A stretch of 60,992 nucleotides of DNA, filler included, from Platydemus manokwari (Eukaryota), in NCBI GenBank assembly GCA_037951405.1. It is 6 parts of 6 records of this genome, joined end to end, with 100 filler letters (N's around TTAATTAATTAA, not from the genome) between each part and the next. Parts side by side here need not be neighbours in the genome. Positions count along the whole stretch, not along the records: positions 22,683 to 33,398 come from JBBMOY011110553.1; 5 more parts are not named here. One strand, written 5' to 3'. The notes beneath the pieces were generated by a model. The model was not told where the DNA came from, made no database searches, and was given only the letters and a program-made list of their open reading frames with translations. The position numbers and the translations under genes are program-made. Shown one piece after another: positions 22,683-33,398 of the stretch; positions within the stretch are counted from its first letter, which is position 1; every line of letters starts with the position of its first letter.

Positions 22683-22855
22683 TATATTGGTCATTGAATA
22701 GCCGAGCTCGAATGGAGCTTGTTTAAGGATTATTAATTGATTTGTTGTTCATGCGCTTCCTCATAAAATTATGATTTCTGTAGAGTCTGCCGGTAGCAAT
22801 GAATTGTTTTTTTTTGTAATCCTGGTTTGCTAATACCAACAATTATATATTTCAG

Positions 22856-25800
22856 GCAATTATTCTTGCCATCCAAGCTGTAATAAATCTCTATCGTCAA
22901 TAAATATCCCCAATAGATGTTGGTCTGCTAGTTCCAATCATTGTCAAATAAGTAAATAATGATCGAAATTTGCTAAATATCTCTGATGAATCAATTAAAA
23001 TTCAAGGAACGAGATGTGTTCAAAGATTAGCCGATGGTTGTGATTGGTGCTTTTTCCGTCGTTTCCAAAACAGTGTTATTGAAGATTGCTGCAATGAAGA
23101 GTGCTCGGGTGGTTGTTATGGTAACAAAGCATCACAGTGTACTGTATGCATTTATTTTAATTATTCCAACAATAATTGACTTTCAAAATTAGACATGCAG
23201 AAATTACATGAATGATGATACTTGTCTCTTAGCCTGTCCTCAAGAATACGGAAGAGTTAAAAAGCCTCGTTACAAGTTAAGAGTTGGAATGATATGTGCT
23301 AATGCATGTCCAGGTGATACTTCACAGTTTATTTGAATGAAATAACGATTTCAACATAAGAGATATTATTAATTTAATAACGATATTGTGATGGTTCGTT
23401 GACAGAACAATGGGCTCTCCAAAATAAATCAATTATTGTAGCGATTTTTTACGAGCCAGAATTGATTGGAAAAGCAACTTCATCACAGATTAATTTATTT
23501 GCCTATTGATTTTATCAATTGATATCATTATTATTATCGATTGAATATTATTGATTAAATATAAATGATTGATTAAATAAAAAATCGTTGAGCCAATTTA
23601 AAAACAATCAAACCTTGATAAAATAAAAGCGAATATTGAATTATTGATAACAGGGGGAACACACACATACACAAATACACACACACACAAATATATATAT
23701 ATGAAACTCAATTAACATGTATTGATTAATACATCGTGATATCAGCATGTTGATATTGATATGACTTGCATCATTTAGTATAACTCTATCATTTGATTGG
23801 TTTATTTTAATTTCACAGAACGTGGGCTCAATGTTGCTCATTATCATTGCTCTGTATTCATTTCCATAGTGATCATTTTATATTATAATTAATTATTATT
23901 TTATATTTATAACTAAACCCGATAAAATATCGCTCAATTTCTGTGAATTGTTAAAAAATGATTTATCATTGATTTTTTCTGACAATTTCTCCAACATCAA
24001 TAAATCTGCGTGTATAAATATCCCAACAATGGAAATATTTGTTTGTCATAATTTTCATACTAAATAATAATTTATTTATTTTAATATCCCATTGTAGAAA
24101 ATCTCTTACTGGAAGGTGATGCTTGCCTTTACAAGTGTACGAGTCCAGGATTTTATCGGGTTGATGGTAAATGCTTGAAGTGCACAAATTCGACGAATTG
24201 TTCAAGGCGAGGTGTTTATTTTTTATGAATAATTTAATGCGAAAATCTTAAAAATTATCTTCAAGCTCTTTTGTTTTTTTATTATTTTTTAAATTTCTTG
24301 ATGTTTTCGATGTTTTCGATTAACTCCGCATTTTTATTCGACGCCTATTAACAAAATAGAACTATTTGGTTGTAGGTTTTCTCAAAGAATTCCTTTGTTT
24401 CGGTTTTTTAGATCGCCATTATTTGAGCTCTTTGCTTTCCAAAATTATCTCTTCTTGGAAAAATATATCCTTGTGATCTTAGGAATTCCAAAACTAGATT
24501 GATGTTTTTATCATCAAAAATTGCATCTTTAGATAATGGAATTTCTCAATTCGATTTGTACGATATGTACATCAATCTTTTATCTTTCTGTTAGAACTGT
24601 CTTACTATTCATTTTTGCCATCAAATTCTTTATCTGGTGGTATATATAATTGTGATAAGAGATTCACATCAAGTTATCTGTAATCCTTGTTATTTTGCAG
24701 CTCTGGCATTTTACTGTTAATATAAAGATGGTAGCATTAATTTCTTCCTTATCTCTGAAGGCAACCGGGAGACTAGAGTCGCTACTCGATCTAAGATATA
24801 TTGAATTACATATCTTGTGGAACCAATCATTACAGGGCAGTCACCATTAGATGCTATATCACTAACTTCATGTCCATTGATGAACACATCTCTTTCGATT
24901 TCTTTCTCCAAACCATTCAATAACTGGTTTAAAGTGATGTTAAGTGATAGAATGTCCAATACCTCTTGTTATATTTATTATTTCAACATCGTGACCATTT
25001 AGCGAAATCCTCATGTGAAGTTCTTGATACGCTCATTGGCCATCTTATGAATGTTATCGGTTACATCAATTATTTTCATTACTCCTCATATAACTATTAT
25101 TTCGATCGATTTAATTATCATTATGCAATACACAACGCCTTAAAAGTCATAAAAACATTCACCTATGTTCATCATTTATAATGCTCTATAAAATTAAAAA
25201 AAATTAAAAAATTCTAATATTTATTTGACATAAACATTGTTCTGTACGAGGCGGTGGGAATTTCCCTCACCTCGACTTAAAAGTTGTATAGAGTAGTTTC
25301 TTTTATGGCTTCTTCCTTGAGGAACCAGCGACATCAATGGCATGGTTCAGGCTGAAGGGACTCTGAATTTTCAAATTTCCCATTTGTTTTACATCAGGAA
25401 ATAATGTCAAATAGCAGATATTTATTCTCATGTTTGCCCATTTTCATCCAATCATATTTCAGAATGCATCATTGACAATTATCATCAAGATAAAAATATA
25501 GCATTCTACATGACGAAATCAATCCTGGAGAATTTTACAGATTGTGAGCACGTCATTGGAACATTTCATTTCACCGATCAGTCGTTTAACAAGTTGGTTT
25601 TGTTGTTATGATTGTTTAAATATTATTTTAGAAAGCATTAATTCTCATTATATATATGCTTATTGTGTTGTCATGACGACACACCAGTGTTTCCGGCAAT
25701 GTTTCTATGGCAAATATCCAAATGAGACCGCTGATATAAAATTTAAATTTTGACTTGACTTACAAAATGTTGCGTCTCAAATTGACATCATTTTATCACG

Positions 25801-28800
25801 AATTATCTTTATTTTCTGGAAACGTTCCTGATTTGAAATAATTGTTTTAATTAGTAAGACAGGCATTGGATTTTCAAAATATAGTGAAGGCTCAATTTTG
25901 GTATCCTTTAATCAATAATATATGGAAATTTCAAATTGCCTTAAATAACTGATGATAAGCGTTTCGATAATCAAGCCAAGGATTTTTAAAAATTAAAAAT
26001 GTGTGCGTAAAAGTGATGATGGTCTGTTGTTGAATGGTCTATTGAATCGATATTCCCATATTGAATCGACACTCCCATATTGAATCGACACTCCCATATT
26101 GATCAGGTCTTTGATGTATTCCAATTGATAATCAAATTTTCGATAACTTACTTCTTCAAGTTGACAATCTAATATAATATCATTTTCCTTTCTTATCACT
26201 GACAATGAGACGACAATCCATTCTAATCGATGCAACTCAGCATGCCAATAAAATTATAATTTATTTTTCGACTGACGCAAAATCTCCAAAATTTTCTAAA
26301 ACCAAGTGCTAGAATAATAATTGCTTCTCCTGTAACAAGACTGGCTTCATTGGTATCATTCGGTTCTCCACGTTTTTAATTATCTGGCATATTTTTTGAA
26401 ATATCTGATAACTCATCTAGACAACTGGCTTAGTTTTTATTCGAAAATCCTTGAAATCAGATTTTTTTTATCAAATCACTCCCAGATCACATTGCTATAG
26501 ACATTCCTATATCTTTGAATATTATCATTAATAAATCTCTATTAAATCTATATTTGAGATGTTCAAGAGATAAAAATTGACAAATCGGCACTTGTTATTA
26601 GAGAATAATTGAGAGAATAATTGATATCAAGACTCAAGATGCTGATCCGTTTAAAGTTTTGATTTCAAAACCTGAACTGAATATCAAATGCTTATATTTT
26701 TCCAGGCATTTTTCTTATTCCATCGCTAAATCAGATCAGCACCGAATTGTAGATTTAAAAATCCATAAATATTGTTTAAAAAAAACACAATTGCGAACAG
26801 AAAGGCAATCCATGAACATTTTCAAATAAATTAAGTCGACCTGTTCGACACAAAAAACAATTTGACGATCAAAAATCCCACTGAAATTGTTTGTAGGTTT
26901 CATTGATAAATATTATCCCTTGCTGGAGGCTGAGGAGATGAATAATTGAATCATTGTGTTCGGTGTATTCATTTTTAATTATGTATCCCGTTTGTCTGTT
27001 CAGTGGGAATCTGTCGGTGTTAAAAGGGATTCTTCAATGGAAAATGAAATCTCCTATTTATTGGCTGTTTTGACTATTTGTCAGACCGCGACCCTTCTTT
27101 ATTAGTAATTCAAATTGATCAATTTTTCTAACAATAATATTTTAATGACCTGATTTTGTCTGCAATATGATTTATTTTCTCAGTAGTCAAGGCAATATAA
27201 CTGTTCCTATGTTGTACAAGCATTTAAAAAAGGTGAAATTTATCACTGGAGATCTTCTTATTAATGCTCCCAACATTGTGCTTCGAAATTTAACATTCCT
27301 AGAAAATCTGAAAGAAATTCGTCATCGTAACGTCTTTATTACTATTGATTGCAATCGAGATAATCATCACTCATTCAGACCTCACATTTTCAACATCGGC
27401 TGCTTTGAATATCATCCGCACTGACTTGGAATTCCTGGGATTGCGACGATTGGAACATGTTTACGGCAATTTTGAAGAACACAATAACACTAATTTGTGT
27501 TATGCAGATACACTTCCATGGTCAGAACATATACTGAAAAGTCATTCTTTTAAACCGGTTTTCAAGAAATGCAGTAAATAATATGAAAATATTTTGCGTG
27601 ATAATAATCATTCAATGAATATATTGAAATTAGACAAAACATGTGATCCAAAATGTAGTTCATTTGGATGTTGGGGTCCTGGTTCAACGATGTGCTATCA
27701 ATGCAAAGATTTCAGGGCTGGTTCAAATTGTGTGGATAAATGTGACGATGAGCCGGGATTCTATATGGATAAAACAATTAAGGAAGAATCTCTCCTGACA
27801 TATGATAATGGAGTGTGCCTTAAATGCCACTACCTGTGTTTACAGAACTGTTCCGGCCCAAGTGCTATGGATTGCGTCGGGGGTTGTCGCTATTTCATGG
27901 TTATTTTTGAGACAATGAAAATGATAAATTAACTCGGTGGTTCAGGAAGAAAATAAATGTGTCCACCAATGTTCAAATGAATATTACACGGAACAGGGCT
28001 TGTGTATCAAATGCAATGAGAATTGCAACAGAGGAGACTTAAGCCAACCGATTTGTACAGGTAGCAGTTCCTATATTGGGGACGGCGGCTGTTCTTTTTG
28101 TTTAAAATTGATTCGAACAGGTTATTGGCATTTCATTTATCTTTTCCAATAAAATCAATTTACATCAGTTACCAATCGTTATCAGTGCCTTGGTACTACA
28201 GAGTGTCCTGATAGTTTCTTTCCAGTTCAGATAGCTTTTAACATGATTTTACTAAACGGTTCAAGCCGTCTGGTAGATGTATGCATCCCATGTCCTTTTC
28301 CATGCTCAAAATGTCACGGCACATCCAAAAATAATTCCTATTGTGAGCTTTGTTCAGGTTACTGGAGTGATGAAATGTGCGTATCTCAGTGTGATTCAAG
28401 TGAAATAATACACCTCATATATTTACAATCAATAATTATTCTTATTATAGAGAGAATTAGTGCACCTCAGATTCCAACTGTGGGGGGAGCTTGCCCCTAT
28501 TGTCATGATCAATGCCAAATCGGGTGTGACTTTCCAAACAATTCTTCACATTGCAAAGATTGCATAAATAAGCGCCTGATTCAATCAGAAGATATGACAA
28601 AAGTTAGATTTTCTTGTAGATAATAAAATATCGATTTTTAATCAAAGCAACCGTATTAATTCTCACTTGATTCCGGGGAAAATTATGTTTTCAACAAATC
28701 GACCTCTGAGAGATTACTATTCTAGAGAGGTATCTTGCCAACTTGAATTTTATTATTATTATTATTTATTATTATTATTATCATTATTATTATTATTATT

Positions 28801-31800
28801 ATTATTTCTCATAATTAGTGATTCTTCAAAGACACTGTAATCACCTTGATATTAGACTTACGTGCTGCTCCTAACTTTATGAAAATTAAACTAGGATTTG
28901 AAAACAAAGGATATTTATTATCAATCAAAAAAATATTATTAATATTATTAACTATCCGATATATATATAATCTTTCTCCATAATCAAAATAAAATATAAC
29001 GCACCACTGTTGCAGATTACTTGTTCTGAATCAATGGCTGATCTCTTGCAGTGCAGGAAATTTTAATCCAATATTTTCATTCTATTCACCTAAATTTTCT
29101 AATGATTTTTATTTATCCACACGATATCGATTGGTGATGATCAACACTTATTTATTCATTAGTAATGATAATAATAATTATTATTATCTATAATGCTTTA
29201 GTTTTTGTCTAATAATTAGCCAATCCCGGAAAACTTTCTACATCCCAAAGTCCAATATAGCATTGAATCCATTATTCCATAAATTTGCTCTCTCATAAGG
29301 GCGTACGCTTCTCATCTCTTGGTCTTGCGCCTAGATGTTCTCTATACAGATATTTATCGAAAATTTATTTATTTAATAATCCGCTATTATTGCTATTATC
29401 GATTATCATCATTAGTTTATCTGCGTGGACCATTGCCCACTCTCTCATAACTATACATACAAGGATGAGGTATCCAAGAAATTTTATTGTTTATCGAAGT
29501 ATCAACTGAATCTTTTCAATGACAATCAGCGAGCTGCATTCATTAGAAAAATTTTGTTTTTGATTTTGGGACCAATATTGATTTTTCTGCTAATAATGAT
29601 CTTCTCAGTTGCTCGATATTTCTTCAAAATCAACAAGGCTAAATCGATAAACTACTTGAAGTCTCTCTATTCCAACATCTGTGAGCCGGACTCGAGAGTA
29701 TGCTTTCGAAACTTGTTCCAATGGTAGCCATAATGTTACGCACAATTTATAGATCCTCCTAACTAAGAAAGATTTCCCGAATATGAATCGTTTACTATTA
29801 ATACCCACTACAGATCTTATTTTCAACATTCGTGATAAACCTCTCGGTACTGGAGCTTTTGGTGCTGTTTATCAAGGTGTCTGGAAATTCTCATCTGATA
29901 CCAATAGGAAAAGTAACGGCAACAACACATTAGATGTAGCGATTAAAGTGATCCAAGCAAACAGAAATGTATCGATTAATGATATTTTTGAGGAAGCAAA
30001 GGTTATTATTTATAAATGGCGGCATTGGTTAAATTTCTTGTATTTCAGGTGATGGCTTCAGTCAGCCATAAACATTGTCTAAGATTAATTGGAGTCTGTT
30101 TAAAATACGAAATGCCATGTCTGGTTACCACTTTTGTAGAACTTGGAAGTCTAGACAAATATTTGAGAAAACATAAGAACTCACTGTCCAGCTATGATCT
30201 CCTCTCATGGGCTGAACAAATCGCTAATGGGATGGCTTATCTGGAAATGAGGAACATTATTCATCGGTTGGGAGCATACGATATTATCATGCTAAAATAA
30301 ATCCTTATTTCAGAGATTTGGCCACAAGAAATGTTCTTCTAAACAACTTAAATCTTGTGCAGATAACGGATTTTGGTTTGTCTCAGATTCTGCGTGAAAC
30401 AGAAAATAATAATGAAATCGTTATCACTAGTGGACAAGTTCCGATCAGATGGCTTGCTCTAGAAACTCTGATCAGTGGATTATATTCTCATAAAACCGAT
30501 GTATGGGCATTTGGTAACGATTTTTTGACTCATATTAGTATTTAGAAATGGGGCAATGCTTTGTATTTCAGGTGTCACTATGTGGGAGATATTTACCTTT
30601 GGTCAAAGGCCATATGATGATTTGGATGCTAGAGAAATTACACCATTCTTGCAACAAAATAATCGTCTGCCACAACCTGACATATGTTCCGTTGAGCTGT
30701 ACATCCTCATGACTCAGTGTGAGCCTTGTCTTCGAGTAAATCAATAACAATGAAAAGATTATTATTATCATTATTATTATTATTAGTAGTAGTAGTAGTA
30801 GTATACACTAGGTATTTTATAATCCACACAGATGTTATAAGTCACCTTATGAAAACAATTAAATTATAAAGATATTATTTTTAAACTAAATATACACGGG
30901 GAGCAGAATAACAGAAATTTCATTTTTCAAAAACACTGAAAACTATTCATATTATCTCTTCGATATATTAGACATATTTTTGAGCACTTTTTAAATCGTG
31001 GTTAATAATTTGAGTAATCAGCTATGATTTATAAAGAAAATGTCTCAAATATCGTATAAAACATAATATTCGAACACTCTCCCACCGGTTTCACTACTCA
31101 ATGACGCAATTACTGAACTCCAAATTTCAATGGATGAACTTCTGTTACTGAATCAAGCCTTGCGTTTTCTTCTAATAATCGAGTTTTAATGGATTGGTTC
31201 AAAGTGATGAATCAATTGTTTACTTTTAAACACGTCTATAAAACCTCGAACATTGTCAGCTCTCTTCACTAATCATCACTGACTTATTTGCAAACTGTAT
31301 GGCAACCGTTCTATCCACTCTATTATTTATCTCAGCATTATGTAAAGCTGTCTGCTTTAGAGCAATTGGGGGCAATTCCGGATGATCGTTTTAGTTAATC
31401 AGAATATAAAGTGCCAGGGGCAGGTTCTTGTGAAATGGAACAACAGTTGCTCAAATATGTTCAAATGGTTTGTGAGATGCGAGTGAAATGGGATATTTTC
31501 GGATTCAGAACTTCCATAATTCTATAAGATGAGTGATTCGAGATGCTATTCAATACTGGCAAATCGAAATGGATATGAAACTCCTCTTTTATTGTTGGAA
31601 TTGTCAATTGATCAAGCCTGCAAACTTTCAGCAGCAAGCGCTAAATATTCTTGGTAGAATCAAAAGACTTTTTTTGTAATTAAGTTGATTTTCTTCGAAT
31701 GTATTTCATTTTTCGTTTTCTTATTTTCGATTCTTTTATTGCTACTTTATTCCCTTAGGGCGATTTAATTATTCGAAAGTGGTAACTCATAACTAGATAT

Positions 31801-33301
31801 TTACAATTAAACAATGAGTTTTGTACTTACAGAACAGATTATCGAGCATAAATGTGTGTCATCTACCAAATATATCAATGATATACAAAACTGATTCTAC
31901 ATCTCCACGTATTTCAGTAATAAATCAAGTGCTGCATAATTATTTTCCCTTATGAATTTATCAACACATATTCTTCATACGTTTTCAGGACATTATTGGG
32001 AACAAAAAATCATTTGGTGCAACATTTTCTAGCACCACTATTTCAAAATATTTTTAAATTGAAAAGAAGCTGATTAACATAATTATTATCGAATCATCGC
32101 AAGTGTCAAATGGCATGATATTTGAACATCGAACATGATAAATCATTAAACCGCCGATCAATTAAAAATCAATCTTTGTGAATAATGTGTGGGTTTTGAT
32201 AAATGCTTTCATGAGGTGTCAAAATATTTTATCAGTGATTTATATTTGAATTATATTTTCCTCTTGTCCTTCAGGCTGGTACGAAATATCTCATGATCGA
32301 CCTTCATTCGATTTGCTGATGACGACATTATTCGATTACAGTAGGCACTCAACGTATTACTTAAATATTCCTGTGAGATATGTTTTATTCATTGACAATG
32401 ATGGTAAGGTGTTTCTGATTGCAGAATGATCCATGCTTGACATCCTACAAATTCCGAAAACAACGCTTGTCATCTCAATGTAGCTATGAAATGCAGATAT
32501 ATCCAAGGCCTAAAGGGGTCTACAAACAGCAGAGCATGGATGGAACTATTTCCACGATCATTGGCGATTATCAAGATGATATTATCGAATCTTCATTGAG
32601 AAGACAAAGCTCTAATTTTAGCTGGATTTCCAGCAAGTACCGCTGTACAGAAGACATTGGTGGTATTAATTGTGATATTGATTGAATCAATTTATGCCAG
32701 ATTATAGAAAGGAAAAGTAATCTTCTCCGTCAGCAATCAGCTTTGTCAGAAAGCCAAGAAGAGAACGAATCAAGTAAAGAAGCAGGTATTTATTAAAATA
32801 AAATTCGAACAACATATATATATCAATCAACCTTTGAATTGGTCTGATGACCTGATCAATAATTGAGGTACTCAAAGTCAGATCATTATAATGAATATAT
32901 TTTATTTTTATTCATAATTCGTGACCACTTGATATACTTGTTTGTGACCTTAACAAGAGATATTTTTTATAGGCTTATATTGATCTGAAATAGTGAATAA
33001 AGTACAATGAGAGATGTGATGAATATCATCGATTAGATGTTATTTTGATTTCAATAAATATTATAATTATTTATGAAATATTCATCGATTTTATTACTGA
33101 TTGAATATTGATCAATATTATCACTATCATTCATATTGTCGATTGATAATACACATTTATTTATCACATCTCTCATTGGAGTGAGCAATTTATCAATTAT
33201 TATCGATTTTATTACTTTATATTTTATAAAATAATATTTTCCTTAAATTGTTTTTATTTGATTTTTATTAATCAGCGATGATCTCTACACGGCTTTGCTA
33301 G
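22856..33301 (+). CDS. EGFR: EGFR/ErbB-family receptor tyrosine kinase; 5'-partial (signal peptide and L1 domain not visible)
   Basis: Phase-compatible GT-AG exons. Furin-like domain II: 22856-22951, 23007-23143, 23193-23313, 24098-24211. L2 domain (NLTFLENLKEI, LEFLGLRRL, NLCYADTLPW): 25463-25592, 27184-27326, 27379-27573. Extended Cys-rich region (CDPKCSSFGCWGPG): 27634-27899, 27946-28120, 28169-28399, 28451-28602. TM segment ILFLILGPILIFLLIMIFSVA: 29416-29697. Kinase: 29753-30001, 30049-30266, 30314-30513, 30572-30718, 32275-32372. Tail: 32425-32659/32662, 32708-32785, and a probable last exon 33276-33301. The specific paralogue is unknown. Confidence 0.95.
24690..25060 (-). mobile_element. 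Degraded non-LTR retrotransposon reverse-transcriptase fragment in an EGFR intron
   Basis: Frameshifted GHDVEIINITRG...DILSLNITLNQLLNGLE...INGHEVSDIASNGD.PVMIGS...IQYILDRV resembles the I.RGVxQGDPLSPxLFN...LAYADDxVL RT motifs. Confidence 0.6.
26053..26102. repeat. 19-bp tandem repeat (CTCCCATATTGAATCGACA, about 2.5 copies)
   Basis: Read directly from the sequence. Confidence 0.85.
28750..28805. repeat. (ATT)n microsatellite, intronic
   Basis: Read directly from the sequence. Confidence 0.85.
29783..32372 (+). other. Tyrosine kinase domain region of the EGFR-like gene; catalytic residues intact
   Basis: PNMNRLLLI (JM-B-like), [74 protein letters not shown], CW...RPSF. Confidence 0.93.
33005..33178. 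mobile_element. 174-bp MITE-like inverted-repeat element in the probable last EGFR intron
   Basis: Perfect 16-bp terminal inverted repeat CAATGAGAGATGTGAT / ATCACATCTCTCATTG (20/21 when extended). TA on the left flank, GA on the right. Confidence 0.6.
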
Positions 33302-33322
33302 ATATTTATATGCTCCCATATC

Positions 33323-33398
<76 letters not shown>
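33323..33398. repeat. (AAT)n microsatellite at a contig end
   Basis: Read directly from the sequence. Confidence 0.95.

What the first reader, a model, noticed from the sequence alone, without database searches (positions are those of the whole stretch)
23235..23297. EGFR with a shortened, remodelled dimerization arm
Seen: the domain II module reads C-PQEYGRVKKPRYKLRVGMI-C, 19 residues between the cysteines, all within one exon and strongly basic. Known: the equivalent human EGFR loop is [28 protein letters not shown] (26 residues), and its YNPxxY hairpin drives both receptor dimerization and the II/IV tether. Here seven residues and that motif are absent, while the kinase is intact. Inference: this receptor may dimerize by a non-canonical route (ligand-bridged, obligate heterodimer with a paralogue, or via the extended Cys-rich stalk). 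This is the best candidate in the window for an undescribed mechanism.
Basis: partly seen in the sequence, partly recalled or inferred. Interest (0 to 1): 0.7.

Follow-up and report, generated by a model that had tools for sequence, protein, structure and literature searches.

The report
Flatworm-type EGF receptor with stub dimerization arm
This is a real, apparently working EGF-receptor-type gene from an AT-rich flatworm-like genome whose "dimerization arm" loop is the shortest (19 instead of the near-universal 26 residues) and most basic among about 100 relatives compared. It is the extreme of a loosening of this loop seen in other flatworm receptors, and nothing here shows a new mechanism.

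Summary
Window 23235-23297 encodes C-PQEYGRVKKPRYKLRVGMI-C: 19 residues between two cysteines, inside one exon (23193-23313). The gene is a multi-exon EGFR/ErbB-type receptor with domains II, III and IV, an extra Cys-rich stalk, a TM helix and an intact kinase.

The module assignment is correct. All six framework Cys/Pro positions of the exon are invariant in a 36-sequence alignment. The flanking exons align to the modules before and after the arm.

In 94 EGFR-family proteins, from vertebrates, arthropods, molluscs, annelids, echinoderms, nematodes and flatworms, this loop is 26 residues in 75. Every shorter case is a flatworm paralogue group: 24 in flukes and Mesocestoides, 21 in Fasciola.

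The window's 19 is the shortest. Its 7-residue gap sits at the hairpin tip (the YNPTTY region), and its net charge of +5 is the highest. The preceding domain II loop is also the longest seen (12 versus 7-10).

Loss of the motif is common in flatworm EGFRs. The II/IV tether is not expected in any invertebrate. Non-canonical dimerization is inferred, not shown.

I rate it a new variant of a known kind, of moderate interest.

The parts
22856..22951 (+). Exon E1: start of domain II (C-HPS-C ... RCW ... NHCQ). Domain I lies beyond the left edge of the piece.
   Evidence: ORF frame and AG/GT sites read. Weak BLAST matches to the start of domain II in homologues.
23007..23143 (+). Exon E2: domain II modules just before the arm (..CCNEECSGGCYGNKASQCT).
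   Evidence: Pfam Furin-like, profile positions 29-75. PDB phmmer aligns it to ErbB2 205-240, directly N-terminal of the arm module.
23051..23086 (+). Pre-arm loop, equivalent to human C199-C207. It is 12 residues, longer than in any homologue compared.
   Evidence: The loop is 7-10 residues in 94 EGFR-family proteins.
23193..23313 (+). Exon E3: the arm module (equivalents of C227-C236, C240-C267 and C271).
   Evidence: C2, C11, C15, P16, C35 and C39 are invariant in the 36-sequence alignment A2. Arm modules of 22 homologues hit 23196-23312 by tblastn.
23235..23297 (+). The finding: the Cys-to-Cys dimerization-arm loop, 19 residues, net charge +5, with a 7-residue gap at the hairpin tip.
24098..24211 (+). 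Exon E4: domain II modules after the arm (ENLLLEGDAC..KCLKCTNSTNC).
   Evidence: tblastn and BLAST matches to the post-arm segment of flatworm receptors.
25463..25592 (+). Exon E5: last Cys of domain II and first turn of domain III (..NFTDCEHVIG..). Two further in-phase acceptors lie upstream, giving exon starts at 25415 and 25418.
   Evidence: Only the start at 25463 gives the canonical Cys spacing.
27184..27326 (+). Domain III exon a (..ITGDLLI..LRNLTFLENLKEI..). The start may be 27187.
   Evidence: Pfam Recep_L_domain, E=6e-6..
27379..27573 (+). Domain III exon b (..LEFLGLRRLEHV..NLCYADTLPW..).
   Evidence: Pfam Recep_L_domain, profile positions 57-110. Splice sites read.
27634..27899 (+). 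Domain IV exon a.
   Evidence: Pfam GF_recep_IV, E=1e-12. PDB best hits are ErbB3, ErbB4, EGFR and LET-23 ectodomains.
27946..28120 (+). Domain IV exon b. It includes the 10-residue loop (27973-28002) at the position of the 21-residue tether loop of vertebrates.
28169..28610 (+). Further Cys-rich stalk exons (invertebrate 'domain V' type). Limits are approximate and at least one short intron lies inside.
   Evidence: Stop-free Cys-rich frames. BLAST matches to the stalk of flatworm receptors.
29416..29697 (+). Exon holding the last Cys-rich module, the TM helix (29551-29610) and the juxtamembrane start.
   Evidence: Best BLAST matches are to group A flatworm receptors.
29753..30001 (+). Kinase exon 1: juxtamembrane PN..LL.I segment, GTGAFG (29846-29863), VAIK Lys (29945-29947).
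   Evidence: Pfam PK_Tyr_Ser-Thr..
30049..30266 (+). Kinase exon 2, ending in H-R(D).
   Evidence: Pfam E=3e-22. PDB best hits are EGFR and ErbB4. 66-72% identical to flatworm group A.
30314..30513 (+). Kinase exon 3: (R)DLATRN, DFG (30369-30377), PIRWLALE.
30572..30718 (+). Kinase exon 4.
32275..32365 (+). Kinase exon 5 (CW..RPSF..). The 3' limit is approximate and tail exons follow.

Best explanation
The piece carries most of a multi-exon EGFR/ErbB-family receptor tyrosine kinase gene of invertebrate (flatworm) type that looks functional. In domain II, the beta-hairpin 'dimerization arm' has lost 7 residues at its tip and is strongly basic, and the loop before it is 4-5 residues longer than in any relative compared. 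That much is shown. What follows is inferred. A stub of this length can hardly reach across to the partner's docking surface, so reciprocal arm exchange probably adds little to dimer formation. The receptor would then be held in its active dimer by other contacts. These could be the rest of domain II, the membrane-proximal Cys-rich domains, the TM and juxtamembrane segments, and the asymmetric kinase dimer. Alternatively it could pair with a paralogue that supplies one full arm, as in the one-armed HER2/HER3 dimer. The feature is the extreme of a relaxation of this loop seen in other flatworm EGFR paralogues. It is not an isolated invention.
For: Gene identity: Pfam finds Furin-like, Recep_L, GF_recep_IV and PK_Tyr on successive exons. 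PDB best hits are EGFR/ErbB for both the kinase and domain IV. All splice junctions read are in phase, and the Cys framework is canonical. Arm: the loop is 19 aa, against 26 in 75 of 94 relatives, 24 or 21 in flatworm group B, and never fewer than 21. Two alignments put the gap at the hairpin tip. The C-terminal half, KPRYKLRVGMI, aligns 1:1 with NPEFKYRLGNL in flukes and [11 protein letters not shown] in human. Net charge is +5, against -3 to +4 in 53 distinct arms. The pre-arm loop is 12 aa against 7-10. Function of the arm elsewhere: arm mutations abolish dimerization of human EGFR and of LET-23 (PMC4465127). The contact residues are Y246, P248 and Y251 against F230, F263, A265, Y275 and R285 (PMC1618406). 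Here the equivalents read F263->V, A265->M and R285->Y. One-armed dimers exist: the HER3 arm is not engaged in HER2/HER3 (bioRxiv 10.1101/2021.05.03.442258).
Against: There is no structural or biochemical test. A 19-residue loop can still form a short hairpin, and a Tyr (Y19 of the exon) may align with Y251. Domain I and the ligand are unknown. No paralogue from the same genome was available. Orthology is unresolved: exon-wise placement is inconsistent.
Confidence: 0.5

Rival explanations
1. The mechanism is canonical. The shortened loop still forms a small hairpin that docks on the partner's domain II, which has co-evolved with it. Dimerization is arm-mediated as in human, fly and worm EGFRs.
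For: The disulphide that closes the loop and the C-terminal strand (K-x-R-V-G) are conserved. An aromatic residue (Tyr) and a Gly suited to a tight turn remain in the stub. The docking-side residues have also changed, as co-evolution would predict. Group B flukes keep arms of 24 or 21 residues in otherwise conserved receptors.
Against: Seven of about 15 hairpin residues are gone, and none of Y246, P248 or Y251 can be placed unambiguously. No relative among 94 has so short a loop.
Confidence: 0.25
2. The loop has a new function. As a basic surface patch it binds a polyanion (heparan sulphate or another glycosaminoglycan) or an acidic partner or ligand, and this bridges or regulates receptor pairs.
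For: Six K/R in 19 residues give the highest net charge of 53 distinct arms. VKKPRY fits the XBBXBX heparin-binding consensus; the consensus is from my own knowledge and the match is read directly.
Against: Short basic motifs arise easily by chance in an AT-rich genome, where Lys codons are favoured. No homologue supports the idea and no test was possible.
Confidence: 0.1
3. The feature has no functional meaning. Either the gene is a decaying or redundant paralogue under relaxed constraint, or the in-frame 21-nt shortfall is an assembly error.
For: The ectodomain is very divergent, only 25-45% identical to any relative in each exon. Expression was not verifiable.
Against: All exons examined are open and all junctions are in phase. 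The Cys framework is intact and every catalytic kinase motif is present. An exact in-frame loss that preserves both closing cysteines is not what misassembly typically gives.
Confidence: 0.07

Closest known systems
Human EGFR/ErbB1-4 (e.g. P0111; PDB 1IVO, 3NJP, 1M6B)
   Same: Same order of domains II-III-IV-TM-kinase, same Cys framework in the arm module, and same kinase catalytic motifs. They are the best PDB matches for the kinase and for domain IV.
   Different: The arm loop is 19 residues, not 26, and lacks YNPTTY. The domain IV tether loop is 10 residues, not 21. An extra Cys-rich stalk sits before the TM helix.
Invertebrate EGFRs with a proven arm: C. elegans LET-23 and Drosophila EGFR
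   Same: Invertebrate architecture with additional Cys-rich region(s) and no vertebrate-type tether loop.
   Different: In LET-23, dimerization depends on the arm (PMC4465127). The nematode and arthropod homologues compared here have 26-residue arms, with a single nematode at 28.
Flatworm group A receptors (S. mansoni SER / Echinococcus EmER type: P0165, P0164, P0170, P0008)
   Same: They are the nearest relatives of the kinase exons K1 and K2 and of the TM exon (66-72% identity in K2). Their arm motif is already degenerate.
   Different: They keep the 26-residue length and end the loop in ..KY-N-F-H-D-I. The window ends in ..K-L-R-V-G-M-I.
Flatworm group B receptors (S. mansoni 'putative receptor tyrosine kinase' P0159, Opisthorchis P0013, Paragonimus P0156, Mesocestoides P0175, Fasciola P0011)
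   Same: They have shortened arms (24, or 21 in Fasciola) with the gap at the tip. They share the R-x-G ending of the loop, the two-residue C-xx-C spacing before it, and the ..EGD.C motif after it.
   Different: The window is shorter still (19) and much more basic. Its kinase exons are not closest to this group. Membership is unresolved.
HER2/HER3 heterodimer
   Same: It is a precedent for an active ErbB dimer in which one arm is not engaged.
   Different: Both human partners still possess full-length arms. No partner is known for the window's receptor.

Membership tests
EGFR/ErbB receptor tyrosine kinase family | Ectodomain order L domain, furin-like Cys-rich, L domain, GF_recep_IV Cys-rich, followed by a single TM helix and a Tyr kinase | tested here: met
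   Pfam hits lie in this order on successive exons. The TM helix is at 29551-29610. Domain I is off the piece and could not be seen.
EGFR/ErbB receptor tyrosine kinase family | Kinase domain closest to EGFR/ErbB kinases, with intact catalytic motifs | tested here: met
   PDB best hits are EGFR and ErbB4. GTGAFG, VAIK, HRDLATRN, DFG and CW..RP are all present.
EGFR/ErbB receptor tyrosine kinase family | Domain II Cys framework, including the disulphide-closed loop at the C240-C267 position | tested here: met
   C2, C11, C15, P16, C35 and C39 of the exon are invariant across 36 sequences.
EGFR/ErbB receptor tyrosine kinase family | 26-residue dimerization arm with aromatic and Pro contact residues (Y246, P248, Y251) | tested here: not met
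   The loop is 19 residues with a 7-residue gap at the tip. It is 26 residues in 75 of 94 relatives. This is a conserved functional feature. It is not a criterion used to define the family.
EGFR/ErbB receptor tyrosine kinase family | Binds EGF-type ligand between domains I and III; ligand-dependent dimerization | not testable with these tools
   Domain I lies outside the piece. No ligand or biochemical data are available.
Flatworm EGFR group B (short-arm paralogues) | Orthology by phylogeny, together with the shared shortened arm | tested here: inconclusive
   Exons E2 and D3b place with group B. K1, K2 and TM place with group A. K3 and K5 place with P0010. All placements have weak support.
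Flatworm EGFR group A (SER/EmER type) | Orthology by phylogeny; 26-residue arm ending in ..F-H-D-I | tested here: inconclusive
   Identity in K1, K2 and TM is highest to this group, but the domain II characters differ.
Insulin/IGF1 receptor family (Cys-rich domain without an arm) | L-CR-L followed by fibronectin III domains; kinase closest to IR/IGF1R | tested here: not met
   GF_recep_IV and a further Cys-rich stalk follow domain III. The kinase is closest to EGFR/ErbB. IR-like proteins P0199 and P0200 scored far lower than EGFRs in the profile search.

The most novel reading that the evidence does not exclude
This would be a natural EGF receptor that has given up arm-mediated dimerization while keeping an active kinase. 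It would use its short, highly basic loop, together with the enlarged neighbouring loop, as a new interface, for example one bridged by a glycosaminoglycan or an acidic co-factor. That would be a mode of ErbB activation not described so far.
Probability: 0.08. Interest if true: 0.75.

Novelty: new variant of a known kind. Interest (0 to 1): 0.4.

Why it matters
The domain II arm is treated as the conserved core of EGFR ectodomain dimerization from nematodes to humans. In the relatives compared here, its length is fixed at 26 residues across most animal phyla. A receptor with an intact kinase but only a stub arm is a natural deletion experiment. It could show how much of ErbB activation needs the arm, and whether paralogues divide labour as HER2 and HER3 do. 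If the host is a parasitic flatworm, divergence of this surface from the host's EGFR also bears on selective targeting. As it stands, this is a sequence-level oddity inside a known family, and it belongs to a trend already visible in other flatworm receptors.

Tried and rejected
(1) Wrong module assignment: rejected. Two independent alignments, and the PDB and Pfam positions of the flanking exons, agree on the assignment.

(2) An alternative or mutually exclusive arm exon in the introns: none found.

(3) A compensating unpaired cysteine for a covalent dimer: rejected. The Cys pattern of domain II is canonical once exon E5 starts at 25463. The two upstream in-phase acceptors would add Cys, but they are not favoured.

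(4) A proprotein-convertase site in the loop: considered and set aside. Pro follows the KK pair and the P4/P1 pattern is not canonical. This is my own reading, with no tool test.

(5) AlphaFold2 on the arm exon alone with a 36-row alignment gave pLDDT 47.9 and is uninformative.

(6) PDB phmmer with the arm exon alone found only a chance ribosomal-protein hit at E=0.26.

(7) Identifying the organism or the gene's own protein failed. No database protein exceeds 72% identity in any exon.

(9) Exon-by-exon tree placement gave inconsistent, weakly supported results.

(11) A literature search for the dimerization arm in flatworms found no description. The only paper holding both terms is a 2006 ErbB evolution study, and its arm discussion covers vertebrate receptors.

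Full report
**What is in the sequence**

The piece 22683-33398 has 31.6% G+C and contains no N. Its + strand carries a multi-exon gene.

Translating 23193-23321 gives an arm module with 19 residues, PQEYGRVKKPRYKLRVGMI, between two cysteines. The Cys codons are 23235-23237 and 23295-23297, which are exactly the finding's coordinates. The exon runs from 23193, after an AG, to 23313, before a GT.

Pfam places the following families on successive exons: Furin-like, Recep_L_domain, GF_recep_IV and PK_Tyr_Ser-Thr. PDB sequence searches give EGFR and ErbB4 as best hits for a kinase exon. For a domain IV exon they give ErbB3, ErbB4, EGFR, ErbB2 and LET-23 ectodomains.

The exon before the arm aligns to ErbB2 residues 205-240, the module directly N-terminal of the arm.

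I read the splice junctions by hand. All of them are in phase, and the introns are 46-60 nt or 0.8-1.6 kb long. The exon table is in the parts section.

The kinase has GTGAFG, VAIK, HR|DLATRN (split by an intron), DFG, PIRWLALE and CW..RP. The TM helix lies at 29551-29610. Domain I lies beyond the left edge of the piece.

**Is the module assignment right?**

Yes. In a 36-sequence MAFFT alignment, C2, C11, C15, P16, C35 and C39 of the exon are invariant. A second alignment of the module alone agrees. Arm modules of 22 homologues hit 23196-23312 by tblastn, and nothing arm-like lies in the adjacent introns.

**How unusual is 19?**

I collected relatives with one full HMMER search using a kinase exon and three word-index searches.

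Source names show that the set spans:
- vertebrates;
- insects, spiders, ticks and scorpions;
- an oyster and other bivalves, an annelid and a nemertean;
- a sea urchin, a crinoid and a hemichordate;
- nematodes;
- flatworms: flukes, tapeworms and Macrostomum.

The arm loop lengths in the 94 proteins where the pre-arm and arm modules could be parsed are as follows:

| Loop length (residues) | Proteins |
|---|---|
| 26 | 75 (41 distinct loops) |
| 24 | 13 |
| 21 | 2 |
| 27 | 2 |
| 28 | 1 |
| 29 | 1 |

An earlier count on 69 proteins gave the same picture.

Every loop shorter than 26 belongs to one flatworm paralogue group, called group B here. It includes Schistosoma, Trichobilharzia, Opisthorchis/Clonorchis, Paragonimus and Mesocestoides at 24, and Fasciola at 21.

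Group A is the SER/EmER type, found in Echinococcus, Schistocephalus, Schistosoma, Calicophoron, Paragonimus and Fasciola. It keeps 26 residues but has mostly lost YNPTTY. Group C (Hymenolepis, Anoplocephala) also keeps 26.

The window's 19 is therefore the shortest seen. Its net charge of +5 is the highest, against a range of -3 to +4 for 53 distinct arms.

**Where the residues are missing**

Both alignments place the 7-residue gap in the N-terminal strand and tip of the hairpin, the region of Y246, P248 and Y251. The C-terminal half, KPRYKLRVGMI, aligns residue for residue with NPEFKYRLGNL of flukes and [11 protein letters not shown] of human EGFR. Group B has a 2-residue gap at the same tip and Fasciola has 5, so the window continues a series.

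The partner-side residues listed in PMC1618406 are F230, F263, A265, Y275 and R285. Here their equivalents read Y, V, M, L and Y. L275 is common in invertebrates, and R285 is lost in all three flatworm groups.

A second length outlier sits next door. The loop equivalent to human C199-C207 (23051-23086) is 12 residues, against 7-10 in 94 relatives.

**Tether**

The domain IV loop that holds the vertebrate tether contacts is 21 residues in the vertebrate homologues. It is 10-12 residues in the invertebrate ones and 10 here, at 27973-28002. A tether is therefore not expected in this receptor, whatever the state of the arm.

**What it probably does**

Mutating the arm abolishes dimerization of human EGFR and of the constitutively dimeric LET-23 (PMC4465127). 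So the arm is functionally conserved in the best-studied members.

A loop that has lost about half of its hairpin is unlikely to reach the partner's docking surface. My best reading is a functional receptor in which arm exchange contributes little. Dimerization would then rest on other contacts, or on a paralogue that provides one arm. The HER2/HER3 structure shows that an active dimer can form with one arm unengaged.

This part is inference. A canonical mini-arm remains a serious rival. The basic loop contains VKKPRY, which fits the XBBXBX heparin-binding pattern, so a polyanion-binding role is possible. It is also speculative, because an AT-rich genome favours Lys codons.

I looked for an unpaired cysteine that could give a covalent dimer and found none. 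The domain II Cys pattern is canonical when exon E5 starts at 25463.

**Whose gene, and which orthogroup?**

No database protein matches any exon at more than 72% identity, so the species' own protein is not in the collections. The nearest relatives are all flatworm receptors.

Exon-by-exon identity and fragment placement disagree with each other:
- K1, K2 and TM sit with group A.
- K3 and K5 sit with an unnamed protein, P0010.
- E2 and D3b sit with group B.

Domain II indel characters lean towards group B: the two-residue C-xx-C spacing, the R-x-G loop ending and the ..EGD.C motif. I leave orthology open.

**Limits**

This is why no multimer or domain II model exists.

Expression, read support and the organism could therefore not be checked.

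The result is unaffected.

**Verdict**

The gene is a new variant within a known family: the extreme of a flatworm-wide loosening of the EGFR dimerization arm. I found no description of this in the literature searched. Interest is moderate.

Noticed in passing
window 23051-23086: The domain II loop before the arm, equivalent to human C199-C207, is 12 residues. It is 7-10 residues in 94 EGFR-family proteins. From my own memory of the human dimer, this region also touches the partner, so both neighbouring loops are remodelled.
   Followed up: partly
window 25415, 25418, 25463: Exon E5 has three acceptor sites that are all in phase with the previous exon. Only the start at 25463 gives the canonical Cys spacing. 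The two upstream starts, which form a NAGNAG-like pair, would add about 16 residues, including extra cysteine.
   Followed up: partly
window 27973-28002: The domain IV loop at the position of the vertebrate tether loop is 10 residues. It is 21 residues in vertebrates and 10-12 in the other invertebrates compared.
   Followed up: yes
window 28750-28806 and 33323-33398: Long trinucleotide arrays: (TTA)x19 inside an intron, and (TAA)x25 running into the right edge of the piece. There is also (AC)n at 23661-23693 and a 19-bp unit repeated 3.3 times at 26040-26102 in the 1.6-kb intron.
   Followed up: no
proteins P0011/P0158 (Fasciola) and P0112/P0209 (Macrostomum): Apart from one nematode (Ditylenchus, 28), flatworms are the only group in the sample where arm length departs from 26. 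Fasciola has 21, the other group B members have 24, and Macrostomum has 27-29. This suggests the arm is under relaxed or changed constraint across the phylum.
   Followed up: partly
protein P0010 (UniParc UPI000807932F, 1344 aa): An unnamed EGFR-family protein about 32% identical to every flatworm group, with no close relative in the word search. It is the best match to the window's kinase exons K3 and K4. Its source organism could not be found.
   Followed up: partly
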